Assembly: GCA_026770705.1 (NCBI GenBank)
Contig: JANJGN010000071.1
Location: 1 to 64,000 of the forward strand
Source of the DNA: Isurus oxyrinchus
Taxonomy: Eukaryota
Length of the DNA stretch: 64,000 bases
Reading direction: 5' to 3'
The notes beneath the pieces are model-generated. The model saw only the letters and a list, made by a program, of their open reading frames with translations, did not search any database and was not told the origin of the DNA. The position numbers and the translations under genes are program-made. This document shows, piece by piece, positions 39,699 to 62,021 of the stretch. Numbering within the stretch: the first letter of the stretch is position 1; each line of letters starts with the position of its first letter.

Positions 39699-39985
39699 GA
39701 GTGACGTCAGAGGGATGGTCTATGAAGGCGCTGCCTCGGAGGGCCATCAGCAGCTCTTGTGTGGTTATTCCGTGTAGCTTTGACTTTCCTTCCCACTCTT
39801 ACACAGCACTGCACGGAGCTTGGTATAAATATTGGTATAGATGGAAATATACCATCACATACACCAAAGATCCCAATTATCGGGTGGCCACATTCGTGGG
39901 ACGTGCTAAAATAATCGGCGACTTGGAAGGGAAGAATTGTTTGGTGAGGACTGATAGTCTCAGAGCTGAAGACAGTGACGTGTAT
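39699..39985 (+). pseudogene. Siglec-like pseudogene A, truncated V-set Ig exon
   Basis: Acceptor cctttcag|GA in phase with the leader. Translation GVTSEGWSMK...SSCVVIPCSFDFP...GAWY...GDLEGKNCLVRTDSLRAEDSDVY has the Siglec Cys pattern. It breaks into Gypsy sequence after DVY and stops at 40000. Confidence 0.85.
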
Positions 39986-41090
39986 TGCACCCAATTCTAA
40001 ATCTTTTCACCAATTAGTCGACCTCATGAAGATGTGTTTTCAGCTGAAGCCGTGGGTAATAATGCAGAGGTTTAAGTTTAACTCCAGAGTAAGGGCCCAG
40101 GGAGAGTCCATCGCAACCTATACAGTGAAGTGGAAGCAGGTGACTGAGCACTGGGACCTCGGAGACACACTCAATGACATGTTGCGGGGCCGATTGGTTT
40201 GTGTCGTTCACCCCAACGCCATTCAGAGCCGTTTACTCGCAGAAGCCGACATCGATTTGAAGCGCACCATGGAAATAGCGCCAGGCATGGAAAGTGCTGG
40301 GAGAGACTGGCGGGATTTACAGGATGTACAACATGGCACCAGTCCTCAGCTGGGACAGGAACCAACCACCGGGCGTGAGGCTCAAACTGGAGTGAGAGAG
40401 AGAGAGAGAGAGACAGCCGCCAAGCGAGAGACAGTCTCTGCCGCTCCAGAAACTAAAAGGCTTTGTGGGAGTATTTCAGCAGCAACTCCGAAGTTGGCCT
40501 GTTCTCGATGTGGGGGGCATTGAGCACGTACTGGACACCTGCAGGTTCAAGGGGGCAGAATGCCATCACTGCCACAAGAAAGGGGCGGGTAATAAAGCAA
40601 TGCAGGGTGAAATCGAGACAGCCCATCAGGCAGTGCACCAACATGATGGAAGTGAATAATATCACAGAGCCTGAAGCTGCTGATACCGATGTCTATTCCC
40701 TGTCCAATGTCACAGTGGTAAAAACTGAACCTATAACCATCACAACCCAAGTGAATGGGCAGCCACTAGTAATGGGGCAGATACGGGAGCCTCAGACACA
40801 GTGGTGGAAGAGCCCACATTTAAACAGCTAAATGAAGGAACCCAGACGCTGAATTTAGAGCAAACAATGGATCAGCTGAAGACACACACTGGAGAATCCA
40901 TACAGGGAAAGGACCTCATCCCAGTACCTGTGTCCTACAGGCAGCAGACAGCCCAGCTTCCAGTGATCATAGCGACAGGTGAGGGCCCTAGTCTTCTGGG
41001 CCGAGACTGGTTCCAGAAAACCAAGCTCAGCTGCTCTGAAATGTTTCACTGGAGGAGTTGCTGAGTTGCTGGGGGAATATGAGAGTGTAT
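39986..41090 (+). mobile_element. Degenerate Ty3/Gypsy gag-protease fragment
   Basis: Gag motifs QRFKFNSRVRAQGESIATY and LNDMLRGRLVC; zinc knuckles CSRCGGH and CHHCHKKG; protease DTGAS at 40780 and GPSLLGRDW. Frameshifted. Confidence 0.9.
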
Positions 41091-41357
41091 CTCGGGAATG
41101 AGTTTGAAGAATTGAAGCATCCTCACAGGCTGCAAGTGTCCCTCAGGTCAGAGTTGGTTCCACTGGAAAATCCTGAAGAGAAAGAAAGCGAATTCTGTGC
41201 CGCTCTGAGCAAACTGAAGAAACAGTTGGCAGGGAAGACCCAACCATGTCCAATGTTCCAGGAGGAAGGCAAGAGATACAAGGAAGAGACTGAAGAGCTG
41301 AAGATTCAGCTGAATGAAACCAAAGAGGCAGTTACAGTATCACAACAAGTTTACAGT

Positions 41358-41682
41358 GCAGAAGGAGGCCATTCAGCCCCTTGAGCCTGTTACACAGGAA
41401 CAGGAGGAGGCCATTCAGCCCCCTCAAGCCTGTTACACAGGAACAGGAGGAGGCCATTCAGTCCCCTCGAGCCTGTTACACAGAAACAGGAGGAGGCCAT
41501 TCAGTCCCCTCGAGCCTGTTACACAGGAACCAGAAGAGGCCCATTCAGCCCCCTCGAGACTGTTACACAGGAACAGGAGGAGGCCATTCAGCCCCCTCAA
41601 GACTGTTACACAGAAACAGGAGGAGGCCATTCTGCCACTTATGTCCGTTATACAGGAACAGGAGGAGGCCATTCAGCCCCTT
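41358..41682. repeat. ~43-bp minisatellite derived from the CR1 3' end
   Basis: Monomer gagcctgttacacaggaacaggaggaggccattcagcccctc resembles the reverse complement of the CR1 tail at 44331-44366. Confidence 0.85.
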
Positions 41683-42064
41683 GTAGGGTGTGGTGGTGTG
41701 TGTCAGCTTCACCTGCGACTTCTGAGCCGTCTGAATCACTCCCAATCCCTGGGTTCTAGACCTTGGACTTATTCGGGGCTTGTCACAAAGTGCAGCAGAC
41801 AACTGGTTTTGGTGCAAGACAAAAACTGAGTTTACTGAAGTCACAAATGAACTTATAACATTAGGATGACACTGAGATTATACAGACTTACAAAGTACAC
41901 TGAGTTAAGAATGGGGAACACACGGCATAACGAGGGAGAATCACGCTACTAATGCCCTTACCCTTGTCCCACCCCCAAACCCTAACTAAATTGCACTAGG
42001 AGAGGTCAGGGGTCATGCTCACCAACCCAGGGTTCCTTGACAGTTGGAAATTTTGAGAACCCTT

Positions 42065-42690
42065 CAAGAGATGGGGAGGGTTACAGGGGCTGGAGGAGGT
42101 TACAGAGATAGGGAGGGTTGTAGGGGCTGGAGGAGGTTACAGAGATAAGGAGTGTTGTAGGGGCTGGAGGAGGTTACAGAGATAGGGAGGGTTGTAAGTG
42201 CTGGAAGCTGTTCCAGAGATAGGGAGGGTTGTAGGGGCTGGAGGAGGTTACAGGTATAGGGAGGGTTGTAGGGGCTGGAGGATGACACAGAGATAGGGCG
42301 AGTTGCAGGGGGTGGAGCAGGTTGTAGAGATAGGGAGGGTTGTAGGGACTGGAAGAGATTACAGAAATAGGGAGGGTTGTGGTGGTTGGAGGATGTTACA
42401 GAGATGGGCAGGATTGTCAAGGCTGGTGGAGGCTTGGGAGATTATTAGGGTTACAGTGGCTAGAGGAGGTGACATGTATAGGGGTGTTGTCGGGCTGGAG
42501 GTTGTTACAGGGATAGGGAGGATTGTATGGGCTTGTGAAGGAGGTTACAGATATAGGGAGGGTTGTGGGAGGTGGAGGAGGTTACAGAGATGGGGAGGAT
42601 TGTAGGGGCAGGTGGAGGTTACAGAGATAGGGAGGGTTGTAGGGGCTGGAGGAAAGGGACAGAGAGAGGAGGTTACAGATATAGGGAGGG
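42065..42690. repeat. 37-bp minisatellite (gagatagggagggttgtaggggctggaggaggttaca), L2-derived
   Basis: Tandem array; the inverted array lies at 45301-46160. Confidence 0.9.
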
Positions 42691-42844
42691 AGACAGTCAG
42701 AGAGAGAGCCTCCAGGAGATAGAGAGCGATAGAGAGATTGAGAGACAGACAGAGACTGAGAGAGGGGGAAGAGAGAAGGAGAGTGAGAGAGAGAGAGAGC
42801 GATTGTGAAAGATGGTGGAAGGGAAGAGTGGGGAGGAGGGGGCC

Positions 42845-43190
42845 TGATGGTATTTTCGCTGGACCAGTAATCCAGAGACCCAGTGTAATGCTCCTGGGAC
42901 CCTGGTTAGAATCTCACCACAGCAGTTGGTGGAATTTCAATTCAATAAAAACCTGGAATTAAAAGTCCGATGATGACCAGGAAACCATTGCTGATTCTTG
43001 TATTTGGGTCACAAATGCCCTTTAGGGAGGGAAATCTGCTGTCCTTACCTGGTCTGGCCTACATGTGACTCCAGACCCACAGCAATGTGGTTCACTTTTA
43101 AAAAGTGGCCTCTGAACAAGGGCAATTAGGGTTGGGCAATAAATGCTGGCCTAGGCAGTGATGTCCACATCACATGAAAGAATGAAATAA
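42845..43190 (+). mobile_element. tRNA-derived SINE with LINE-shared tail (related copies ~58470-58838, interrupted, and ~60010-60275)
   Basis: Shared body cctttagggaaggaaatctgc...tacatgtgactccagac and tail gggcaataaatgctggcctag. Confidence 0.75.
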
Positions 43191-43764
43191 AAGGACAGAG
43201 AGGGACAGACAGAGTCGAGAGACACCCAGAATGAAAAAAAACACAGTAAACACTGGAAAATAAACATTCTGGTCTGATCTGGTCTTGTATACCTTCAAAT
43301 GGAACACCAGTAAAACAGGGAAATAAGAGTACTGGGCCAAACTGTTAGAGATGGTCACATTTAGAGAGAGAGAGAGAGAGAGAGAAAGAGGGAGACACTG
43401 AAAGAGATAAGGACAAGGAAAGAAAGAGTGAGAGAGAGAGAGACAGACAGAGACACACAAAGAAGTAGAAAGAAAGTGATAGAGATGAAGCAGGAGAGAA
43501 TGAGGAGAAAGATAGATAGATAGAGAGAGAGGATGGTAGAGAAAGAGAACGAGAGGAAAAGAGACAAAGGCAGAATGTGATGGAACACTGAATCCTTGTC
43601 TATGCGTTTTGAAATCCAGCCCAGAACTATCATTGGAAGATTCAGCGAGTGTCCAGTACAGGGGACCCAGCCCAACCTTCTCATCCTGACCTTCCCAGTG
43701 GGGCTGAAGAGGGCAGAGAGGAAACCTTCCTCTGTTATTCTGTTGTCGAATAAACACAACAATT

Positions 43765-44376
43765 CTGGAACTCTGCCCTTTCTATCTCACGGATTAGAAT
43801 ATAAGGGGGCAGAGGTCATGCTTCAGTCTACATAAAGCCCTGGCTAGACCACACCTGGAGTCACTGTGAGACATTCTGGGCCCCACACCTTAGGAAGGAT
43901 ATATTGACCTCGGAGGGAGAGCAGTGTCAGTTTACCAGAATGAGACCGGGACTCCAAGGGTTAAATCACAAGGAGAGATTAAACACAAACTCGGCTTGTA
44001 TTCCCTGGAAGTTAGAATGTTAAGCAGGAGATTTGATGAAAGTTCGCATGATAATAAGGGGAACAGATCGGGGGCGATAAAGAGAAACCATTTCCCCTGG
44101 TTGGGGGGAGTCTGGGACTCAGGGTCAGAGCCTAAAAAGGAATTAAATTAGGAAGTACAAAGGGTGGGAGAAATTTGGAACTCTCTTCCCCAAACAGGAA
44201 CTGATGCACGATCAAGTTGTTCATTTTAAACCTGTGAGACTGATAGATTTTTGTTATCCAAAGGTATTAAAGGAGATGGGACAAAGCCATATGGGGCTAG
44301 TTTGCAGATCAGCCATGATCTCATTGAATGGTGGAGCAGGCTCGAGGGGCCAAATGGCCTCCTCCTACCCTCATGT
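43765..44376 (+). mobile_element. CR1-type LINE 3' end
   Basis: GLEYKGAEVMLQ-like coding remnant followed by the tail gatctcattgaatggtggagcaggctcgaggggcc. Confidence 0.8.
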
Positions 44377-44719
44377 AATAGAAACTTACCTGTCAGAAGC
44401 CAGTTTATGTTGATGTGAGTCTGAGTCGATGACTGAACCCAGTTGGTAACTTGTTCCATACAAAGCAAGAACGTTCATGCCCTTCAATGTTCCTGGATAA
44501 ACCATGAACAAAGCTGGTGACAGACAGTCTCCACATGGTAAACAGTTAACCCCTAAACCTCAGCGTAAATCAGTTCCCCCTCGAGGCCCCTTGTCCAAAA
44601 TAAAAGCAACGCACACAATTTGTAAAATAGTAAGTGTAGCAATGAGAGGAGTAAGGGGTTAGGGGGCATGCGGTTCACCTGATTTGCCGACATAAGAACC
44701 AGCCCCTCTGTTTTTGCTA

Positions 44720-44945
44720 TGTTGTGTTGCGTCAATATGAACACATATCTGCACAAGGTGAAGGGCGTTGCGGAGGGACTGATAGTTCTCGGTGCCAGAC
44801 AGTCAATGTCCCAGTGACCTTACTGCTGGTCCCAGGCCAGTGGGACAGGGAACATCGACACTGCAATATCCAGAAATGGGTGTGATACCACACAGCAACC
44901 CGCCCCCGGCTGTCCCCTTCAAGTGTTTCAGGTATAAGAGCAGGA
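44720..44945 (+). promoter_or_regulatory. Candidate TATA promoter of the small two-exon gene
   Basis: TATAAG 44933-44938, GC box cccgccccc ~44899-44907, GGTGCCAGAC 44791-44800, TTGCGTCAAT 44727-44736. ATG lies 77 nt downstream of the TATA start. Confidence 0.5.
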
Positions 44946-45009
44946 AGCTCCTCTAGTTACAAACCAAAGCATCAAAGCAGAGCCAGAAGATCAGAAGAGA
45001 CAGGCAGAG

Positions 45010-45102
45010 ATGGGAAGCTCCCAGATGAAATGGCGACTTGTCTTGTTCACTCTGACTTTGCTGCTCTCCCTGCAGCTGAGTCACTTCTTCTCCTTGTCGA
45101 GG
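45010..45102 (+). CDS. Signal-peptide exon of a small secreted-peptide precursor (hepcidin-like exon 1?): MGSSQMKWRLVLFTLTLLLSLQLSHFFSLSR
   Basis: ATG at 45010, basic n-region plus Leu-rich h-region, phase-0 donor AGG|gtaagc after 31 codons. Not in the ORF track. Hepcidin identity is inferred from exon size, phase and locus context. Confidence 0.55.
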
Positions 45103-45300
45103 GTAAGCTAAGAGATGTCCCTCTGGGTGAGGTGTTTCTTGCACATGACTCTACGTCTACCACCCAGATAGACTGGTCTCTTCCGCAGTTTGATATTATT
45201 ATGTTCGTGCCTTTAATATTGTCGCCCTCTATGAATTTAACATCATTTCCTTCTGTCGTTTCCCCTGAAATTCTCATTCTTGTTTTCAATCCCTCCTCAG

Positions 45301-46160
45301 CCACTCCCTATCTCTGTAACCTCCACCAGGCCTTACAACCCTCCCTATCTCTGTAACCTCCTCCAGCCCCTACACCCCTCCCTATCTCTGTAACCTCCTC
45401 CAGCCGCTACAACCCTCCCTATATCTGTAACCTCCTCCAGCCCCTACAACAATCCCTATCTCTGTAACTTCCTCCAGCCCCTACAACTGTCCCTATCTCC
45501 GTAACCTCCTCCAGCCCCTACAACCCTCCCTATCTCTGTAACCTCCTCCAGCCCCTATAAACCTCCCTATCTCTGTAACCTCCTCCAGCCCCTACAACCC
45601 TACCTATCTCTGTAACCTCCCCCAGGCCCCACAACCCTCATGATCACTGTAACCTCCTCTAGACCCTACAACCCTCCCTATCTCTGTAACCTGCTCCAGA
45701 CCCTACAACCCTCCCTATCTCTGTAACCTCCTCCAGGCCCTACAACCCTCCCTATCTCTGTAACCTCCTCCAGGCCCCACGACCCTCAGAATCACTGTAA
45801 CCTCCTCCAGCCCCTACAATGCTCATGAACTCTATAACGTCCTCTCCACACTATAACTCTCCCTATCTCTGTAACCTACTATGGCCCCTACAACAGTATC
45901 TATTTTGGTAACCTCCTCCAGCCTCTACAACCCTCCCTACCTCTGTAACCTCCTCCAGCCCCCACAACCCCCCCCATCTCTTTAACCTCCTACAGCCCCT
46001 ACTCACCTCCCTATCTCTGTAACCTCCTACAGCCCCTACAACCTTCCCTATCTCTGTCACCTCCTACAGCCTCTAGAACCCTCCCTATCTCTGTTACCTC
46101 CTACAGCCTCTACAACCCTCCCTATCTCTGTAACCTCCTCCAGCCGGAACAACCCTACCT
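45301..46160. repeat. 37-bp L2-derived minisatellite, opposite orientation to 42065-42690
   Basis: Monomer tgtaacctcctccagcccctacaaccctccctatctc, preceded by the L2 ORF2 remnant (ILILVF...PYLCNL). Confidence 0.9.
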
Positions 46161-46214
46161 AAATCTCTGGTCTGAGTCTCACTCCAGGGAATTCAGTCCC
46201 ATAACGTCGGTCAA

Positions 46215-46812
46215 CACTCCGTGCTGAGGGAGTGCTGGACTGTCAGAGGGTCAGTAGTGTGGAAGTGTTGCACTATTGGAGGGACAGTACTGAGTGAGTG
46301 CTATACTGTCGGAGGTCAGTACTGAGGAAGTGCTGCATTGTTACAGGGTCAGTACTGTGGAAGTGTTGCACTGTCGGAGGGTCAGTACTGAGGTAGCGCT
46401 GCACTGACGGAGGGACAATACTGTGGGAGTGCAGCACTATCGAAGGGTTAGTACTGAGGGAGTGCTGCAGTGTCAAAGGGTTAGTACTGAGGGAGCACAA
46501 CAATGTTGAATGAGACATTAAACCGAGTCCCCCGTCTGCCCTCTCGGGCGGGTGTGAAAGATCCCACAGCCACTATTTGGAGGAAGAGCAGGGGGTGTTC
46601 TCCCCGGTGTCCTGGGACCAATATTTATCCCTCACCCAACATCACCAAAAACAGATGATCTAGGCCATGATCACATTGCTATTTGTGGGATCTTGCTGTG
46701 CACAAATCAGCTGCCACATTTCCTACAGTGTGAGTGCACTTCAAAAACATCCTTCAGTGGCTGTGAAATGCTTTGGGATGTGGTGAAAGGCGTTAGAGAA
46801 ATGCAAGTCTGT
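46215..46812 (+). mobile_element. Deu-domain (SacSINE1-like) SINE with a tandemly expanded 33-bp segment
   Basis: 33-bp repeats, then gagacattaaaccgagtccc...aaagatcccacagccactatt..., ending aaatgcaagtct. Confidence 0.8.
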
Positions 46813-46909
46813 CCTCCTCCCCCTCTCTCTCCTGTACCTCTCTCTCTCTCTCTCCCTCTCCCTCAATCCTCCTCTCACTTTCTCCCTGATAAATTCTTTC
46901 TTTTTGCAG

Positions 46910-46966
46910 GTTGACACTGCTTTAGGTTCTTCGACGATTGAGAAATCTGTGGATTCCCCGGACACG
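46910..46966 (+). CDS. 57-nt phase 0-0 exon VDTALGSSTIEKSVDSPDT (hepcidin-like prodomain exon 2?)
   Basis: Strong acceptor ttctttctttttgcag, donor ACG|gtaggt, in frame with 45010-45102. Confidence 0.55.
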
Positions 46967-47654
46967 GTAGGTGGAAATTCATTCCTTATTTTAAGGTTTC
47001 TCCCTGCTCGTTTCTTCCACAGAAAGTTTTCTGATTTCAAGCTGATTTCAGTGGCAGTCTGTCTCGGTTATACTCAGGAGGCATGTTTGAAATCGAACCC
47101 CCCCCGCCCCCTTTTTTTGCAAAGCTGGGAAGAGGCAATTCCAAGGAAGTGAACATATCCCCACAGGAATTTTAAATGTAACCCACGCCGGGAATAGTGA
47201 GAGGGAGACTGATCCAGCCTGGGAGTGGGTTAAAGAGAGGCTGGGAGTCGAGAGTCGGAGAGAGGGATGGAATGGGGGAGGGAGGGATTGGAAGAGAGAG
47301 ACAGAGAGTGGGACGGGGAGGGGTGAAAGGGAAAGAACATAGGTGGGAGAGAGTGACAGAGGGAGAAATTAAAGAGATGCAGAGTGAGGGAAAGTGAAAA
47401 GGGAAGAGTGATTGTCCAAGAGAGAGAAATTAACAGGAAAGGGAGAGTTACAGAGTGAGCGAAAGTTACAAAAATAGTGTGAGAGAGAGGGAGAGATACA
47501 GAGTGGGAGAAGGAGACAGGGGAGAGAGAGGGAGAGAGACAGGAAAAGGGAGAGAGGAGAGAAAGATTGGGAGAGAGGGCAATTGAGAGGAAGAGTAGGA
47601 GAGAGAGAGACAGGGAGAGGAGGAGTGGATGAGAGGAAGAGAGAGAGATATGGA

Positions 47655-47995
47655 GCAGGAGAACACCTCCTCCGGTCCCGATGTTCCTCCAAAATCTCTG
47701 ACATTACTGCATCTCCCGGGTCCCCCTGATTCCCATCGCTCCACCATTGGTGGCCGTGCCTTCAGCTGCCTGGGGCCCTGAGCTCCGGAATACCCTCCCT
47801 TAACCTCTCTGCCTCTCTCTCTCTCTCTCCTTTAAGACGCTCCTTAAAAACTGACATCTTTGACCAAGCTTTTGGTCACCTAACCCTAATATCTCCATAT
47901 GTGACTCAGTGTTAGACGTCTCTCTGATTTACGCTCCGGTAATGTGGGCTGGGACATTTTGCAATATCAGAGGCGCTGTGTAAATGCAAGTTGTG
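47655..47995 (+). mobile_element. L2-type LINE 3' end
   Basis: cgctccaccattggtggccgtgccttcagctgcc...tcctttaagacgctccttaaaa...aaatgcaagttg. Confidence 0.7.
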
Positions 47996-48494
47996 AGTGT
48001 TATGTGGAAGGGAGACCCCAGGCGGCAGTCAGTGCCAGAGACTGGAGTCATTGTGTGCAGACCGTATCTAATCTCTCCGAATGCACAATCGGTTTGACTG
48101 TCAGCCAAAGCACTTTTGATATTTGATCCTTCTAACTGTTTATAACCAGGCCTACATCAAACACCGAGAGGCTGGTTAATCAACAGACACCTTAGAGGAT
48201 CAAGTGAAAGACAAAGAGGACTTGCATTTCTCTAGCGCCTTCCAACACATCAGGACGTCCCAAAGTGTTTCGCAGACAATCAAGTGCTTTTTTTCTTTCA
48301 TGTGACGTCACTGATGTACTGTGGGAAAAGAATCAGCCATTGGCGCACAGTAAGATCCCACAGACAGCAGCATGATAATGACCAGCGCGCTCCCAGTACT
48401 TGCACTGCAAGTGTCAGTTCAGGATGTGTGCTCGATTCTCTGCAACTCTCAGCTCTGAGTTAAAAGGACCACCAGGCATAATTGAGAAATTACC

Positions 48495-48915
48495 GAGCTG
48501 TCGGAGGGTCAGTACCGGCGGGGGGGCAGGACAGTCGGAGGGTCAGTACTGAGGGGGTGCTGCATTGTCAGACGGTCAGTCTTGGAGTGCTGCACTGTCA
48601 GAGGGTCAGTACCGGCGGGGGACTGCACAGTCGGAGGGTCAGTACTGAGGGGGTGCTGCATTGTCAGACGGTCAGTACTGAGGGAGTGCTGCACTGTCAG
48701 AGGGTCTGGGCTAAGGGAGTGCTGCACTGATGGAGGGTCAGTACTGAGTGAGTGCTGCACTGTCAGAGGGTCAGTGCTAAGGGAGTGCTGCACTGTTGGA
48801 GGGTCAGTGCTAAGGAAGTGCTGCACTGTACAGAGGGAGTGTGAGACTGACAGAGGGTCACTATTGAGGATGTGCTGCACAGTCGGGGGGGTCAGTACTG
48901 AGGGAGCACTGCACT
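48495..48915 (+). repeat. 33-bp Deu-SINE-derived minisatellite (paralogous array 51570-51852)
   Basis: Tandem cagtactgagggagtgctgcactgtcagagggt. Confidence 0.9.
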
Positions 48916-49061
48916 GCCATAGGTGGTTTCTTTCAGATGACATGAGAGAGAGGGTTAAACCCACTGAGACAAGACTGACACTAGCGAGGCTGCTCAATAA
49001 TTTAACCCTATCAGTGCCAGTAAATAATGTGAGGATGTCTTCTGTTTCCATTTCTCTGTAG

Positions 49062-49310
49062 GGTAAACAGAACGTGCTGATTACTGAGCCCCGGAACACA
49101 ACCAGAGACACAACTAGTGAGGGGGAGACCCCAGCTCCGCGGGGTCTCTCTGAAGGTGCATTGGGAGGCGATGCTGGACATTGGCACATCGACAATCCCA
49201 ACGGCCTTCTCTACGCCAATCCCCAAGTATTGAGGATGTCCAGTGATGATGGGTCTGTCCACAGGGAAGAGGAGACGGAATACGCACAGATCAGGTTCGA
49301 GCATAACTGA
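49062..49310 (+). pseudogene. Orphan Siglec-like terminal cytoplasmic exon A (ITIM-like LLYANP, ITSM TEYAQI)
   Basis: Acceptor tttctctgtag|GGT in phase 0, 82 open codons then TGA; AATAAA at 49843. No transmembrane exon found upstream. Confidence 0.8.
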
Positions 49311-49508
49311 ATGAGAAATGGGGAGTGGGAGTGAGGAGGTGTGAGGGTGGGGGGTAGTGATTGAGTTTCCTGGGAACAGGAAACAACCCACTGGGGGAGA
49401 GGGGGAGAGAGGGAGGAAGGGATGCGATTGGGCTGCGGTTGCTGTGGTTTGGAATGAAATGCTTCTCCAGAGAGGACTGGATGCTGAGCCACTGGGGATA
49501 GAGATTCA

Positions 49509-49547
<39 letters not shown>

Positions 49548-49879
49548 TCTTTGTCTTTCTTTCTGTGTCTGTCACTCATTCTCTATCTCCAGCTCCTCCT
49601 TTAAGATGCCCGTTAATAACTGACTTTGTTGACTCAGCTGTTGGTCTCCTGTCCCTTATATCTCCTCATGTGCCTCAGAGTCAGGTGAAGATGTGACTAA
49701 CAATTCCCGGATGAGCCTTGGGACATTTTGCTACATTAAAGGTCCTATATAAATGCAAGTAGTTGCAGTAAGTCTGATCTGCTTCGATTAACAATGGAAC
49801 CACAAAGGCTCCTTCGACAGGGCGTGTGTGCAGGAGGATCCCAATAAATACATTGAGCTGTGAGATTTTTAATTCTTAC

Positions 49880-50332: not shown

Positions 50333-50466
50333 ATTCTGTGCTTTGTATAGAACTGATTTAAAGAGACAGTCCCAGTCGTTGGTCTAAGATTACAGTGGGC
50401 TCTGTGTCTGTGCTACACTGACTCTCTGCTATATGATAACCACAGTGTGATATTGTGTTATTGCAG

Positions 50467-50548
50467 GAGAAAGACAGCGATGGAGGAGAGAGTTTCAGGG
50501 ACCAGAGACATTGCATTGACCCCCAGTCCACTCTCTGTGAAGCACCAG
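50467..50548 (+). pseudogene. Orphan juxtamembrane cytoplasmic exon (x-RKTAMEERVSGTRDIALTPSPLSVKHQ)
   Basis: Acceptor tgttattgcag, donor CAG|gtacag. 82 nt gives phase 2 to phase 0, in frame with the exon at 51997. It starts with basic stop-transfer residues. Confidence 0.7.
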
Positions 50549-51996: not shown

Positions 51997-52245
51997 GGTA
52001 AACAGAACGTGCTGATTACTGAGCCCCGGAACACAACCAGAGACACAACTAGCGAGGGGGAGACCCCAGCTCCCCGGGGTGTCTCTGAATGTGCAGTGGG
52101 AGGCGATGCTGGACATGGGAACCCTGACAATCCCGACGAGCTTCTCTACGCCAATCCCCAAGTCTTCAGGGTGCCCAGTGGTGATGGGTCTGTCCACAGG
52201 GAAGAGCAGACGGAATACGCACAGATCAGATTCAAGAGAAACTGA
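51997..52245 (+). pseudogene. Orphan Siglec-like terminal cytoplasmic exon B (LLYANP, TEYAQI)
   Basis: Duplicate of 49062-49310 with the same acceptor; open frame to TGA; AATAAA at 52853. Confidence 0.8.
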
Positions 52246-53384
52246 GCGTGAAAAAGGCAGAGGTGGTCAGGAGGTTTGTGGATGGTGGCAGGGATGAAGA
52301 TTCTTGGGAACATGAGACAACCCACTGGGGGAGAGGGGGAGAGAGGGAGGAAGGGACTGAATGGGTCTGTGGTTGGTGTGGTTTGGAATGAAATGTTTCC
52401 CCAGTGACGACTTGATGCTGAGTCATTGGGGACAGAGATTCAGTNNNNNNNNNNNNNNNNNNNNNNNNNNNNNNNNNNNNNNNNNNNNNNNNNNNNNNNN
52501 NNNNNNNNNNNNNNNNNNNNNNNNNNNNNNNNNNNNNNNNNNNNNNNNNNNNNNNNNNNNNNNNNNNNNNNNNNNNNNNNNNNNNNNNNNNNNNNNNNNN
52601 NNNNNNNNNNNNNNNNNNNNNNNNATTAACTGGCTTTGTGAAATCAGCTTTTTGTCACCTGTCCCTAATACCTCATTATGTGTCTCTGAGATGGATTTAT
52701 ATGTAGGTAACAATCCCCTGAAGAGATTGGGGACAGTTTGTTACATTAAGTGTGCCATATAAATGCAAGTTGTTGCAGGAAAGTTGATTTGCCTCGATTC
52801 AGAATGGTAATTCGGAGGGTCCATCGACAGGGCGTGTGTGCAACAGCCTCGCAATAAATGCATTGCACGGCAACAACTAAGCATGTCCTTTGATGCTGAT
52901 GCATCCCAGTACTGCTGTGTGGACACATCACAACCGAGGGACTGCCTGACTGCGTGCAGCCAACATGGCCGAATAGTAATTAGCAGAAATGTGATGTCAC
53001 TGAACTTTGTTGACATTTCAGAAAGTGCTTTCTGAATTCTGCAACTTGTTTATTCTGTGATAGATTACAAGAAGCCTTTGCATTTTCTATAATATTACAT
53101 TTATTGTCACAAGGGATTGAAATGCCCAGACACCACCACCTGGAAGTTCGCCTCCAAGACACACATCATCCTGATTTTGAAATATATCGCCATTCCTTCA
53201 CTGCCACTAGGGTCAAAATCTTGGACTTCCTTCTCTAACTGCATTGTGGGTGTACCTACACCACATGGACTGCAGAGGGTCCGGAAGGCAGCTCACCACC
53301 ACCTTCTCAAGGTAATTAAGGATGGGCCATAAATGCTGGCCTAGCCAGTGATGCCCACTTCCCATGGAAGAATGAATATATAAA

Positions 53385-56971: not shown

Positions 56972-57011
56972 ATGATCGGGAAATCTTACTTCCTCCTGTC
57001 ACTTCTCCAAG
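56972..57011 (+). CDS. Siglec-like gene B, leader exon (MIGKSYFLLSLLQ-)
   Basis: Acceptor ctctttcag before 56930, ATG at 56972, phase-1 donor AAG|gtaat, in frame with the V exon at 60500. Confidence 0.85.
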
Positions 57012-57639
57012 GTAATATCATCATCAGCTCGGACAGACTTATGGTTAATAGTCTTTGTAAAAGATCATTCTTATTGACCTCTAATTGGGAACTGATTTAG
57101 CAGTGAGCCAGTGTACAAACTCACACTATGTCCCATTCATCCATCACTCCTCTGCTCACTGATATACACTGACACCCTGTCTGACAGCAGAATTGGAGGA
57201 CAGCAGAGGCCTTGGAGGGTTGTAGGGGCTGGAGAAGTGTACAGGGATAGGCAGGTTTGTAGCAGCGAGAGCAGAATCTCAAAATTCAGGTGCTGTCAGA
57301 CGTTGGTCAGTGAGCAATGGGGATTGATGGATTGAATAGAGAAGCAGGGATAAAACCTGGTGGGTGAAGCCTATCCTAATGAGAGTTATCCGATAGCAAT
57401 AACCTGAAATTTGTGTCCTTTGCTGCCTTTATTCAAAACTTCCCATGAAGACAACACAGCAGCTCCTAGAATAGACAGGCTGTTCAGTGTCACACTTCCT
57501 GTCCATTCTCACCTTGCTAGATACTTCAATAAGGGAGCAAGATAACTGAAAGAGAGAAGGGAGGCAAAGCTGTCTGTGTGTAAAACTGTCAAATATTCTG
57601 AGTTATCATGATTGTCTCTGACCTGCTGCAGAGTTTAAA

Positions 57640-60499: not shown

Positions 60500-60865
60500 T
60501 TGGACTGTCACAAGAGTGGAAAGGTGACACTCCACAACAGGTGACAGCGCAGGAAGGTTCGTGTACACAGATCCCATGTCATTACAGTTATCCATCACAT
60601 TTGGAAAAGCAACCACGAGTTGGAATCTGGTTTAATAATGAGGAATGGAGAACATTGTCTATAGCCTTTCACTCCAAGGATCACAGTCACGAGTTACCAC
60701 GGTTCCACCATCGGACCCGGCTGTCTGGAGACCTGAAAGATGGTGACTGTTCCCTGATTATAAACAACATCAGACGGGAAGATGCAGGACCTTATTTTTT
60801 CAGAATAGAATTTGACAGCAGAAATAAATACAGCTACTATCCTGTAAGCCAGCTTCACGTTTCAG
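60500..60865 (+). CDS. Siglec-like gene B, V-set Ig exon with the essential Arg (MAG/CD22/CD33-family type)
   Basis: ccacag|TT...CAG|gtaag, 366 nt, phase 1-1. Motifs QEW, EGSCTQIPC, GDCSL, EDAGPYFFR (AGA 60802-60804) and KYSY. Confidence 0.93.
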
Positions 60866-61472: not shown

Positions 61473-61724
61473 AACTCCAATCTCTGGTCTGAGCCTCTTC
61501 TCTCATCCAGTGTTCTCAATTCACATGTCTCGGAGTGAACGTGTATTAAGCTGAGAGACAGAAACACTACTGCCAAAGAGCAAGAAAATCTTTCCTGATC
61601 ATCGTAACCTCTCAGTTCTGATATCATCCTTGTAAAAGTGCTTTCTCTTGTGGGACTGTGGTTTCTATTTGAACTGATGCTTCACATTATATTTCTCTAA
61701 AAGGATCCATTCTCTGTCTGTTAG

Positions 61725-62021
61725 ATTTCACAGATAAACCCACGATATTCCCTGCTGAAATTATTGCAGGAAAGCGTGTGGATGTAAGCTGCACCTTCAA
61801 CACAACGTGCAATGGAACAGCAGCACCTGTCTTAACCTGGGACACTCCCACTGACGTACCTGGATCAGTCTCAAACACTGTAACTCAGCATGGTGTCAGT
61901 CTGACCTATACTTCTGTTCTGACCCTGATCCCATCACTCAAACACCACGGACACACTCTCAGCTGCAGAGTGAGATATCCATCTGTTTCATCGGAGCGGA
62001 CCCTCGTACTAACTGTGCAAG
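61725..62021 (+). CDS. Siglec-like gene B, Ig domain 2 (C2-set)
   Basis: gttag|AT...AAG|gtaag, 297 nt. DFTDKPTIFP...VSCTFNTTCNGTAAPVLTW...HGHTLSCRV, including the extra inter-domain Cys. Confidence 0.92.

What the first reader, a model, noticed from the sequence alone, without database searches (positions are those of the whole stretch)
44720..49850. Possible in-frame chimera: hepcidin-like promoter and exons 1-2 spliced to a Siglec ITSM tail
Seen: a TATA promoter, exon 45010-45102 (phase 0), exon 46910-46966 (phase 0-0), exon 49062-49310 (phase-0 acceptor) and AATAAA at 49843. These join into an uninterrupted 132-aa ORF: hydrophobic leader, Ser/Thr/Asp linker, then a tail with LLYANP and TEYAQI. 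Inference: a deletion fused two neighbouring broken genes. If the leader is cleaved, the product is a secreted tail fragment. If it is retained as an N-out anchor, the product would be an ectodomain-less tyrosine-motif adaptor, although the N-terminal K/R favours cleavage or N-in topology. It may simply be untranscribed debris.
Basis: partly seen in the sequence, partly recalled or inferred. Interest (0 to 1): 0.8.

Follow-up and report, generated by a model that had tools for sequence, protein, structure and literature searches.

The report
Truncated hepcidin gene spliced onto Siglec tails
A partial copy of a shark hepcidin gene (promoter, signal-peptide exon and pro-region exon, but no hormone exon) sits in front of leftover tail exons of a broken Siglec immune-receptor gene and is spliced onto them in frame in public RNA-like data, most likely a transcribed by-product of rearrangement and not a working new gene.

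Summary

Both halves are now identified by homology:
- Exons 1 and 2 match a basking-shark hepcidin (P0033, Pfam Hepcidin) at 29 of 31 and 16 of 19 residues. The window has no Cys-rich exon 3.
- The tail exon is the C-terminus of lamniform shark Siglec/CD33-like proteins.

In run X1 (a guessed RNA run, Logan contigs) GT..AG joints link 45102^46910, 46966^49062 and 46966^48150.

Tail 1 has an internal donor after 49294, a juxtamembrane exon lies at 50467-50548, and tail 2 starts at 51997. A 237-aa ORF is therefore as likely as the 132-aa one.

Caveats:
- The two tail copies share their first 57 bases.
- The scan's own unchecked notes report the same chimera at four other places in this genome, so the scan found this before on other DNA.
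- The joints therefore cannot be assigned to this copy.

The leader is a hepcidin signal peptide, so the tyrosine motifs would end up outside the cytosol. A signalling role is unlikely.

The parts
38833..38878 (+). Leader exon (CDS part, phase 1) of the broken upstream Siglec gene ('gene A')
   Evidence: Read. The leader resembles the start of Cetorhinus Siglec-13 P0022/P0023.
39699..39990 (+). V-set exon of gene A, cut off after ...DSDVY by an inserted retroelement
   Evidence: tblastn with P0022 residues 14-111 gives 87.8% identity on 39692-39985. Pfam V-set is weak (E 0.026). Gag-like ORFs follow at 39975-41829.
44933..44939 (+). TATA-like box (TATAAGA), about 70 nt upstream of the ATG
   Evidence: In X1 the bin 44891-45081 has depth 228634, against 1196 in the bin before it. 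The transcription start site was not mapped; contigs cannot show it.
45010..45102 (+). Hepcidin exon 1 (signal peptide), 31 codons, phase 0 donor
   Evidence: It is 29/31 identical to P0033 and P0032. Joint 45102^46910 is seen in 10 X1 contigs.
46910..46966 (+). Hepcidin exon 2 (start of the pro-region), 19 codons, phase 0-0
   Evidence: It is 16/19 identical to P0033 residues 32-50. X1 joints on both sides.
48150..48179 (+). Cryptic alternative acceptor; the reading frame stops after 9 codons
   Evidence: Joint 46966^48150, GT..AG, 1 X1 contig, depth 844. Sequence.
49062..49310 (+). Siglec tail exon 1 (LLYANP, TEYAQI). It has an internal GT donor after 49294 and its own stop at 49308-49310.
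   Evidence: Joint 46966^49062 is seen in 1 X1 contig, depth 4352. The loose end at 49295 continues exactly as 50468-50492.
49843..49848 (+). AATAAA after tail exon 1
   Evidence: X1 depth here is only 54-221.
50467..50548 (+). Siglec juxtamembrane (JM) cytoplasmic exon, 82 nt. It links the tail-1 internal donor to tail 2 in frame.
   Evidence: The same peptide lies between the two tails in P0001, P0018, P0019 and P0020. Use of its donor in RNA was not seen, because my laid stretch ended at 50400.
51997..52245 (+). Siglec tail exon 2 (terminal; no internal donor)
   Evidence: Best match is Carcharodon CD33-like P0002, 74/82.
52853..52858 (+). AATAAA after tail exon 2. An N run at 52446-52625 lies in this 3'UTR and was left alone.

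Best explanation
Shown:
- A truncated duplicate of a hepcidin gene lies 2.1 kb upstream of the orphaned 3' end of a Siglec gene. The duplicate has the TATA-like box, exon 1 (signal peptide) and exon 2 (first part of the pro-region); the mature-peptide exon is missing.
- The Siglec 3' end consists of tail exon 1, a juxtamembrane exon and tail exon 2.
- The 5' end of a Siglec gene lies 5-6 kb further upstream: a leader and a V-set exon cut by a retroelement. Its middle part (other Ig exons, TM exon, first juxtamembrane exon) is absent.
- In public contigs of one run (X1), the hepcidin exon-2 donor is joined by canonical GT..AG splicing to a Siglec tail acceptor and, less often, to a cryptic acceptor at 48150.

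Inferred:
- The strong hepcidin promoter drives transcription through the region, and the exon-2 donor, lacking its own exon 3, pairs with the next good acceptors. The frame fits because both are phase 0.
- Products would be 132 aa (one tail) or 237 aa (tail 1, JM, tail 2).
- The leader is a hepcidin signal peptide. The chain would therefore enter the ER, lose the leader and be secreted or degraded as an acidic, Cys-free polypeptide that I take to be disordered.
- The ITSM tyrosines would then be out of reach of cytosolic kinases and SH2 phosphatases.
- It is therefore most likely a transcribed, translatable by-product of rearrangement in a fast-evolving hepcidin/Siglec cluster, without receptor-type signalling.
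For: - Hepcidin half: one search returned 2 candidates, both hits. P0033 and P0032 of Cetorhinus LOC144671611 are 94% identical over exon 1. One search gives their sequences. One search gives P0033 Pfam Hepcidin E 1.5e-11 on residues 53-87. One search finds exons 1 and 2 once each in the window and no hepcidin exon 3; the only hits were low-complexity, best E 0.015.
- Siglec half: one search found 15 proteins at E <= 0.001. Searches show the tail at the C-terminus of proteins that NCBI names Siglec or CD33-like in Carcharodon, Cetorhinus and other sharks; in 4 of 19 hits (P0001, P0018, P0019, P0020) the match covers 99-100% of the two-tail query; their sequences show TM-JM-tail1-JM-tail2.
- Missing middle: searches find no Ig, TM or JM hit between 39990 and 49061 (best E 0.35). 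Searches show that the gene A V-set equals the start of the 458-aa Siglec-13 of Cetorhinus.
- Splicing (X1): joint 45102^46910 has 10 contigs, depth 10779. Joint 46966^49062 has 1 contig, depth 4352. Joint 46966^48150 has 1 contig, depth 844. All are GT..AG. Exon bins are 140112-228634 deep, against about 600-1700 for the intron bins free of repeats.
- Internal donor: the loose end at 49295 equals 50468-50492. The GT donor is present in tail 1 only.
- Leader: its Kyte-Doolittle 19-residue maximum is 1.71, the same as in intact hepcidin P0033, against 2.58 for the Siglec TM segments.
Against: - X1 is only guessed to be RNA, and it consists of contigs. Strand, ends and levels cannot be read.
- The first 57 nt of the two tail exons are identical. 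The joint therefore cannot tell 49062 from 51997.
- At 49139, the one place in the tail-1 exon where X1 differs from the window (the window's copy 2 reads C there), all 13 X1 contigs read C where the window has G.
- The 3'UTR of copy 1 is only 54-221 deep, against 4352 at the joint. The 132-aa, copy-1-terminated form is therefore minor at best.
- X1 contigs off the exons differ from the window by 0-2.4% (table 8). Unchecked scan notes report the same chimera at four other places in this genome and many intact, highly expressed hepcidin copies. The joints may come from a paralogue.
- X4, X5 and X8 (organism B) show no such joints.
- No annotated protein with this architecture was found in the length ranges 31-145 and 224-712 aa. 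The range 146-223 aa was never searched.
- Signal-peptide cleavage, secretion and lack of function are inferred, not tested.
Confidence: 0.66

Rival explanations
1. This particular copy is silent or nearly so. The spliced contigs in X1 come from one of the other chimeric loci of the same genome, or from intact hepcidin genes for the exon 1-2 joint.
For: - The joint at exon 1-2 has 10 contigs, which suggests several near-identical sources.
- 49139 reads C in 13 of 13 X1 contigs against the window's G.
- X1 contigs off the exons differ from the window by up to 2.4%.
- Unchecked scan notes s1-866030, s1-868551, s1-866042 and s1-869595 describe the same layout elsewhere, and other notes describe many expressed hepcidin copies.
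Against: - Three X1 contigs in intron 1 (45180-45324, 46519-46711, 46685-46827) match the window with 0 differences.
- One contig runs from exon 2 into intron 2 (46939-47162).
- No differences of 10% or more are listed inside exons 1 and 2.
- The promoter, the splice sites and the ORF are intact here.
Confidence: 0.2
2. It is a working new gene: a secreted, possibly N-glycosylated acidic polypeptide made under a hepcidin promoter, kept and amplified by selection.
For: - The ORF is open in both forms, the Kozak context is good and splice sites are canonical.
- Depth at the joint in X1 is high.
- The same layout is reported at several places in the genome (unchecked).
- An NTT sequon is present in each tail.
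Against: - The tail evolved as a cytoplasmic segment. It has no Cys and I found no known extracellular function for it.
- No annotated counterpart was found in Carcharodon or Cetorhinus within the length ranges searched.
- Multi-copy status is equally expected from segmental duplication of a neutral unit.
- Tail 1 carries several private changes.
Confidence: 0.09
3. It is an ectodomain-less membrane adaptor. The leader stays as an N-out anchor and the tyrosine motifs face the cytosol, acting as a decoy or scaffold for SH2 proteins.
For: - The Kyte-Doolittle 19-residue mean of 1.71 is just above the classic 1.6 threshold, a value I recall.
- TEYAQI fits the ITSM pattern T-x-Y-x-x-[IV], a pattern I recall.
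Against: - The same segment is the leader of an intact prepro-hepcidin (P0033). Hepcidins are secreted peptides with cleaved signal peptides (established knowledge).
- K7 and R9 lie on the N-terminal side, which favours N-in orientation or cleavage.
- The hydrophobic core is about 14 residues, and its hydropathy is far below that of the Siglec TM (2.58).
Confidence: 0.03
4. It is an assembly artefact: collapsed or mis-joined repeats put hepcidin and Siglec pieces side by side.
For: - The region is full of 33-nt and 37-nt satellites and SINE-like repeats.
- An N run lies at 52446-52625.
- No laid piece spans the whole stretch.
- One X1 contig diverges to the left of 47133 (loose end).
Against: - The spliced joint itself shows that exon 2 and a tail exon lie on one transcription unit in the X1 animal.
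- X1 contigs cover 46939-47162, 47839-48178 and 48205-48500 colinearly with the window.
Confidence: 0.03

Closest known systems
Hepcidin (HAMP) genes of lamniform sharks, e.g. Cetorhinus maximus LOC144671611 isoform X2 (P0033)
   Same: - A three-exon layout with phase-0 junctions.
- Exon 1 is 29/31 and exon 2 is 16/19 identical.
- The gene lies among Siglec genes. P0033 is on the same 13.67-Mb contig as P0001, P0003, P0005 and P0020.
   Different: - The exon with the furin site and the eight-Cys peptide (Pfam PF06446) is absent from the window.
- Exon 2 is joined to foreign exons instead.
Cetorhinus LOC144671611 isoform X3 (P0032)
   Same: It has the same two hepcidin exons followed by a non-hepcidin third exon in an NCBI model. 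An exon-2 donor picking another downstream acceptor therefore has a precedent in a relative.
   Different: Its third exon is unrelated to Siglec tails.
Double-tail Siglec/CD33-like genes of Carcharodon and Cetorhinus (P0018, P0019, P0001, P0020)
   Same: - The module tail 1 (ending ...TEYAQIR at an internal donor) - JM exon - tail 2 is the same.
- Tail 1 is 67/78 identical to tail 1 of P0018. Tail 2 is 71/80 identical to tail 2 of P0018.
   Different: Those proteins have a TM segment, and mostly Ig domains, in front of the tails. Here no TM, first JM or Ig exon precedes tail 1.
Chimeric genes born from partial duplication, e.g. human CHRFAM7A (PMC8998457, abstract start seen in the listing), and fusion transcripts of segmental duplications (PMC6169893, abstract start seen in the listing)
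   Same: A partial copy of one gene is placed next to parts of another and transcribed as a hybrid.
   Different: - Here a secretory leader is fused to a cytoplasmic signalling tail, which moves the tail to the wrong compartment.
- No function or selection is shown.

Membership tests
Hepcidin family (Pfam PF06446) | N-terminal signal peptide and pro-region homologous to hepcidin prepropeptides | tested here: met
   Exon 1 is 29/31 and exon 2 is 16/19 identical to P0033.
Hepcidin family (Pfam PF06446) | Cys-rich mature peptide (eight Cys) after a basic cleavage site | tested here: not met
   No match to P0033 residues 51-88 in the window apart from low-complexity hits, best E 0.015. The window's exon 1 and both tail exons have no Pfam hit. 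The locus is therefore a truncated hepcidin copy, not a hepcidin gene.
Siglec (sialic-acid-binding Ig-like lectin) | N-terminal V-set domain, C2-set domains and a TM segment in the same transcription unit | tested here: not met
   No Ig or TM exon lies between exon 2 and the tails, or anywhere in 39990-49061. The nearest V-set exon (39699-39990) is truncated and lies upstream of the hepcidin promoter.
Siglec (sialic-acid-binding Ig-like lectin) | Cytoplasmic tail homologous to Siglec tails, with an ITSM-like T-x-Y-x-x-[IV] (pattern recalled) | tested here: met
   One search gave E 1.2e-64 to 2.2e-11 for nine shark proteins. TEYAQI is present in both window copies and in 15 of 19 aligned tail units.
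Siglec (sialic-acid-binding Ig-like lectin) | Canonical membrane-proximal ITIM [ILVS]-x-Y-x-x-[ILV] (pattern recalled) | tested here: not met
   LLYANP has Pro at Y+3 in both window copies. The same holds in 13 of 19 aligned units; 6 of 19 have I or V there.
Chimeric (fusion) gene from partial duplication or rearrangement | Parts derived from two different parent genes on one strand, in order | tested here: met
Chimeric (fusion) gene from partial duplication or rearrangement | A transcript that joins the parts | tested here: inconclusive
   A GT..AG joint 46966^49062 is seen in one X1 contig, depth 4352. However, X1 is only guessed to be RNA, the joint fits 51997 equally well, and paralogous copies may be the source.
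Chimeric (fusion) gene from partial duplication or rearrangement | Protein made, and under selection | not testable with these tools
No proteome data were available.

The most novel reading that the evidence does not exclude
The hepcidin-front/Siglec-tail unit is not debris but a young, amplified gene family. Under a hepcidin promoter, the shark would export a former cytoplasmic signalling tail (one or two units, each with an NTT sequon) as an abundant secreted polypeptide. That would be a change of compartment giving birth to a new plasma or defence protein, with the several copies in the genome kept by selection.
Probability: 0.09. Interest if true: 0.7.

Novelty: new member of a known kind. 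Interest (0 to 1): 0.4.

Why it matters
- It is a clean, datable example of how a partial duplicate with a very strong promoter captures neighbouring exons. Both parents are identified, the splice is seen, and the missing parts are accounted for.
- It shows how unstable the hepcidin/Siglec cluster of lamniform sharks is.
- It is a warning for annotation. Ab initio models here will give 'uncharacterized proteins', and the high RNA depth on hepcidin exons 1-2 is shared among intact and truncated copies.
- If the product were made and kept by selection, it would be an unusual case of a cytoplasmic tail turned into a secreted protein. Nothing here shows that.

Tried and rejected
- A search for an annotated counterpart of the short product, using the tail exon alone (46-145 aa candidates), found nothing.
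- A search with the double-tail part of P0001 (224-712 aa candidates) gave 19 hits. The three without Pfam domains (P0019, P0020, P0005) start with Siglec Ig or TM sequence, not the hepcidin leader. The other 16 carry Ig domains in the listing. Candidates of 146-223 aa were never covered.
- Of the 15 hits I fetched 10. I left out P0008 and P0011-P0014, which were repetitive multi-stretch matches of 25-36% identity.
- Exons 1, 2 and the JM exon have no second copy in the window.
- Remnants of Ig, TM or first JM exons in 39990-49061: none.
- Left border of the tail duplication: homology between the two units starts inside the 33-nt satellite (about 48498 against 51550) and runs to the AATAAA. 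The breakpoint could not be placed more exactly, and recombination between satellites is only a guess.
- The idea that exon 1 is a Siglec TM or leader exon was rejected. There is an in-frame stop at 44935, a phase-0 donor, and the hepcidin match.
- One all-words look-up was also blank.
- Papers: searches listed no paper on shark hepcidin genes among Siglecs or on such a chimera; I saw only listings and abstract starts. I read passages of PMC4453067, which places HAMP and USF2 in the mammalian FFAR locus and MAG and USF2 in the vicinity of FFAR2. That HAMP lies directly beside MAG and CD22 in humans is my recollection. Supplements were closed and not consulted.
- I did not predict a structure or run a signal-peptide predictor (none is offered). 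Kyte-Doolittle values stand in.
- Tissue, species and library of X1 are coded, so I cannot say where the RNA comes from.

Full report
WHAT IS IN THE SEQUENCE

- TATAAGA lies at 44933-44939. An in-frame stop lies at 44935.
- The ATG at 45010 has a good context.
- Exon 1 (45010-45102) has 31 codons: a short basic N-terminus, a Leu-rich core and a polar end.
- Exon 2 (46910-46966) has 19 codons rich in Ser, Thr and Asp.
- The 249-nt exon 49062-49310 carries LLYANP and TEYAQI and ends in a stop. AATAAA follows at 49843-49848.
- All junctions are phase 0 with canonical GT and AG.

The length of 132 aa is 31+19+82 by arithmetic.

THE TWO PARENTS

Siglec half.
- The tail exon searched alone against 1.84 billion representatives gave 15 proteins at E <= 0.001.
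- Of the ten I fetched, nine carry it at or near the C-terminus of a Siglec-type protein: eight named by NCBI as Siglec, CD33-like or hemicentin-1-like, and one 'uncharacterized' (P0005). They come from Carcharodon carcharias, Cetorhinus maximus, Stegostoma, Hemiscyllium, Scyliorhinus and Mustelus. The tenth, P0006, is a 96-aa whale-shark model that is a bare tail exon with intron read-through in front.

Hepcidin half.
- Exon 1, extended upstream by its own in-frame 5'UTR codons to pass the tool's length window, found two proteins. Both are isoforms of Cetorhinus LOC144671611.
- Isoform X2 (P0033, 88 aa) reads leader, pro-region, a basic site and an eight-Cys peptide. It hits Pfam Hepcidin at E 1.5e-11 on residues 53-87.
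- Window exon 1 is 29/31 and exon 2 is 16/19 identical to it.
- The window holds no counterpart of its third exon.
- 'Hepcidin-like' is therefore not just an architectural resemblance. These are hepcidin exons 1 and 2.
- P0033 sits on the same 13.67-Mb contig as four of the Cetorhinus Siglec proteins. Hepcidin thus lies among Siglec genes in a relative as well.
- In mammals HAMP and USF2 share the FFAR locus, and MAG and USF2 lie in the vicinity of FFAR2 (passages of PMC4453067). That HAMP directly adjoins MAG and CD22 is my recollection.

- The tail exon is tandemly duplicated. The two copies are 49062-49310 and 51997-52245, 90% identical in DNA and 67/82 in protein. The unit of about 2.93 kb runs from a 33-nt satellite to the AATAAA.
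- Between the copies lies an 82-nt exon, 50467-50548. Its peptide is the juxtamembrane (JM) piece that precedes the tail in all full-length relatives.
- Four NCBI models (P0001, P0018, P0019, P0020) read TM - JM - tail 1 (ending ...TEYAQIR) - JM - tail 2.
- The window has what this needs. There is a GT donor right after 49294 in tail 1 only; tail 2 has AT at that place. The lengths 233 and 82 nt restore phase 0 at 51997.
- A transcript entering tail 1 can therefore either stop at 49308 (132 aa) or run on through JM and tail 2 (237 aa by arithmetic).
- In tail 1 the four residues after the internal donor differ from the family's conserved ending. This is what one expects if that read-through has long been unused.

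THE BROKEN SIGLEC

- At 38833-38878 lies a Siglec leader exon. At 39699-39990 lies a V-set exon that is 87.8% identical to residues 14-111 of Cetorhinus Siglec-13 (P0022, 458 aa). It is cut off after ...DSDVY by an element with gag-like ORFs.
- P0022 goes on with two more Ig domains, TM, JM and one tail.
- Nothing of these is left between 39990 and 49061 (best E 0.35).
- The hepcidin promoter and exons 1-2 lie in unique sequence between two inverted arrays of a 37-nt minisatellite.
- The anatomy fits 'two neighbouring broken genes fused'. Whether by one deletion, by insertion of a partial hepcidin copy into a Siglec gene, or by satellite-mediated recombination is not shown.

RNA EVIDENCE

One call each of the look-up of sequencing runs and read laying was allowed. 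All runs are Logan contigs with coded names, and their kind is guessed.

X1 (organism A) shows these GT..AG joints:
- 45102^46910: 10 contigs, depth 10779.
- 46966^49062: 1 contig, depth 4352.
- 46966^48150: 1 contig, depth 844.

Further observations in X1:
- The exon bins are 140112-228634 deep. The intron bins free of repeats are about 600-1700 deep.
- A contig ending at 49295 runs on with 25 letters that equal 50468-50492. This is the tail-1 internal donor joined to the JM exon.
- Spliced joints at predicted borders, together with this exon/intron contrast, argue that X1 is RNA.

Results that limit this reading:
(a) The first 57 nt of the two tail exons are identical. The exon 2-tail joint therefore fits 51997 as well as 49062.
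(b) At 49139 all 13 X1 contigs read C, as the window's copy 2 does, and not the G of copy 1.
(c) The 3'UTR after tail 1 is only 54-221 deep. A loose end at 49422 does not continue as copy 1 does.
(d) X1 contigs off the exons differ from the window by 0 to 2.4%, and one contig diverges to the left of 47133.
(e) A contig upstream of the TATA box (44700-44896) has the same depth (667) as the introns.
(f) The three organism-B runs (X4, X5, X8) show only repeats and, in X5, one 126-nt contig on 49063-49181. They show no joints.

Notes of this scan are AI notes that I could not check. They report the same hepcidin-front/Siglec-tail layout at four other places of this genome and many intact, very highly transcribed hepcidin copies. 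The scan has thus found this before on other DNA. The depth at the exon 1-2 joint must be shared with those genes, and the chimeric joint cannot be assigned to this copy.

HOW IT MOST LIKELY WORKS

Shown: a hepcidin promoter and exons without their own exon 3, followed on the same strand by strong Siglec tail acceptors, and hybrid splicing in one run.

Inferred:
- Transcription from the hepcidin promoter reads through. The exon-2 donor takes the next usable acceptors: 48150 weakly and the tail acceptors strongly.
- NCBI's isoform X3 of the Cetorhinus hepcidin gene (P0032), with an unrelated third exon, shows the same behaviour in a relative.
- The leader's hydrophobic core is identical to that of an intact prepro-hepcidin. 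Its 19-residue hydropathy (1.71) is far below that of the Siglec TM (2.58). Hepcidins are secreted after signal-peptide cleavage (established knowledge).
- The product should therefore be luminal or secreted. It would be an acidic, Cys-free polypeptide (one Cys in tail 2) with one NTT sequon per tail, and I take it to be disordered.
- Its tyrosine motifs would then be on the wrong side of the membrane for Src-family kinases and SH2 phosphatases.
- The first motif also lacks the canonical ITIM residue: Pro at Y+3, as in 13 of 19 aligned tail units.
- I conclude that it is a transcribed, translatable by-product, with about two-thirds confidence. The membrane-adaptor reading is very unlikely.

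NOVELTY

- Chimeric genes from partial duplication are a known kind. This is a new, well-resolved example.
- I found no paper on it or on shark hepcidin/Siglec clusters (listings only).
- I found no annotated protein with this architecture in the ranges 31-145 and 224-712 aa. The range 146-223 aa is untested.
No orthologous locus could be compared, and the age of the fusion and any selection on it remain open.

Noticed in passing
window 1-38600: Four or so tandem units of roughly 10 kb. They consist of purine-rich low-complexity arrays (GC skew up to 0.99), CA/TG-type microsatellites and the 33-nt satellite, with several N runs. The long 'ORFs' there are translation of simple repeats.
   Followed up: no
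window 39975-41840: A retroelement-like insert with gag-like ORFs cuts the V-set exon of the upstream Siglec gene after ...DSDVY. A 57-nt-type internal repeat lies at 41380-41660.
   Followed up: partly
window 42080-42680 (-) and 45290-46150 (+): Two arrays of the same 37-nt minisatellite in inverted orientation flank the hepcidin promoter and exon 1. A short piece of it is also seen at 57200-57260. Whether this marks a mobile or recombinogenic unit is unknown.
   Followed up: no
window 56972-57011, 60500-60865, 61712-62021, 62241 onward: An apparently intact next Siglec gene. It has a leader; a V-set exon (Pfam V-set E 1.9e-11, Ig_CD22 E 5.8e-11); a C2 exon 96% identical to Carcharodon P0021; and then repeated near-identical Ig exons that run off the window. 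The scan's notes s1-868913 and s1-866972 concern these.
   Followed up: partly
P0032 (Cetorhinus LOC144671611 isoform X3): An NCBI model joins hepcidin exons 1-2 to an unrelated 37-residue third exon that looks derived from a transposable element (my impression, not tested).
   Followed up: no
tail units of 13 shark Siglec proteins: Two tail types coexist. One has LLYANPQV... (Pro at Y+3) and the other has LLYANINFSKL (canonical ITIM). Both keep Y-x-N, which I recall as a Grb2-SH2 type motif.
   Followed up: no
window 47133: In X1 one contig matches the window from 47133 rightwards but has at least 255 unrelated letters on its left. This could be a paralogous locus or a structural difference at the poly-C/poly-T tract in intron 2.
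   Followed up: no
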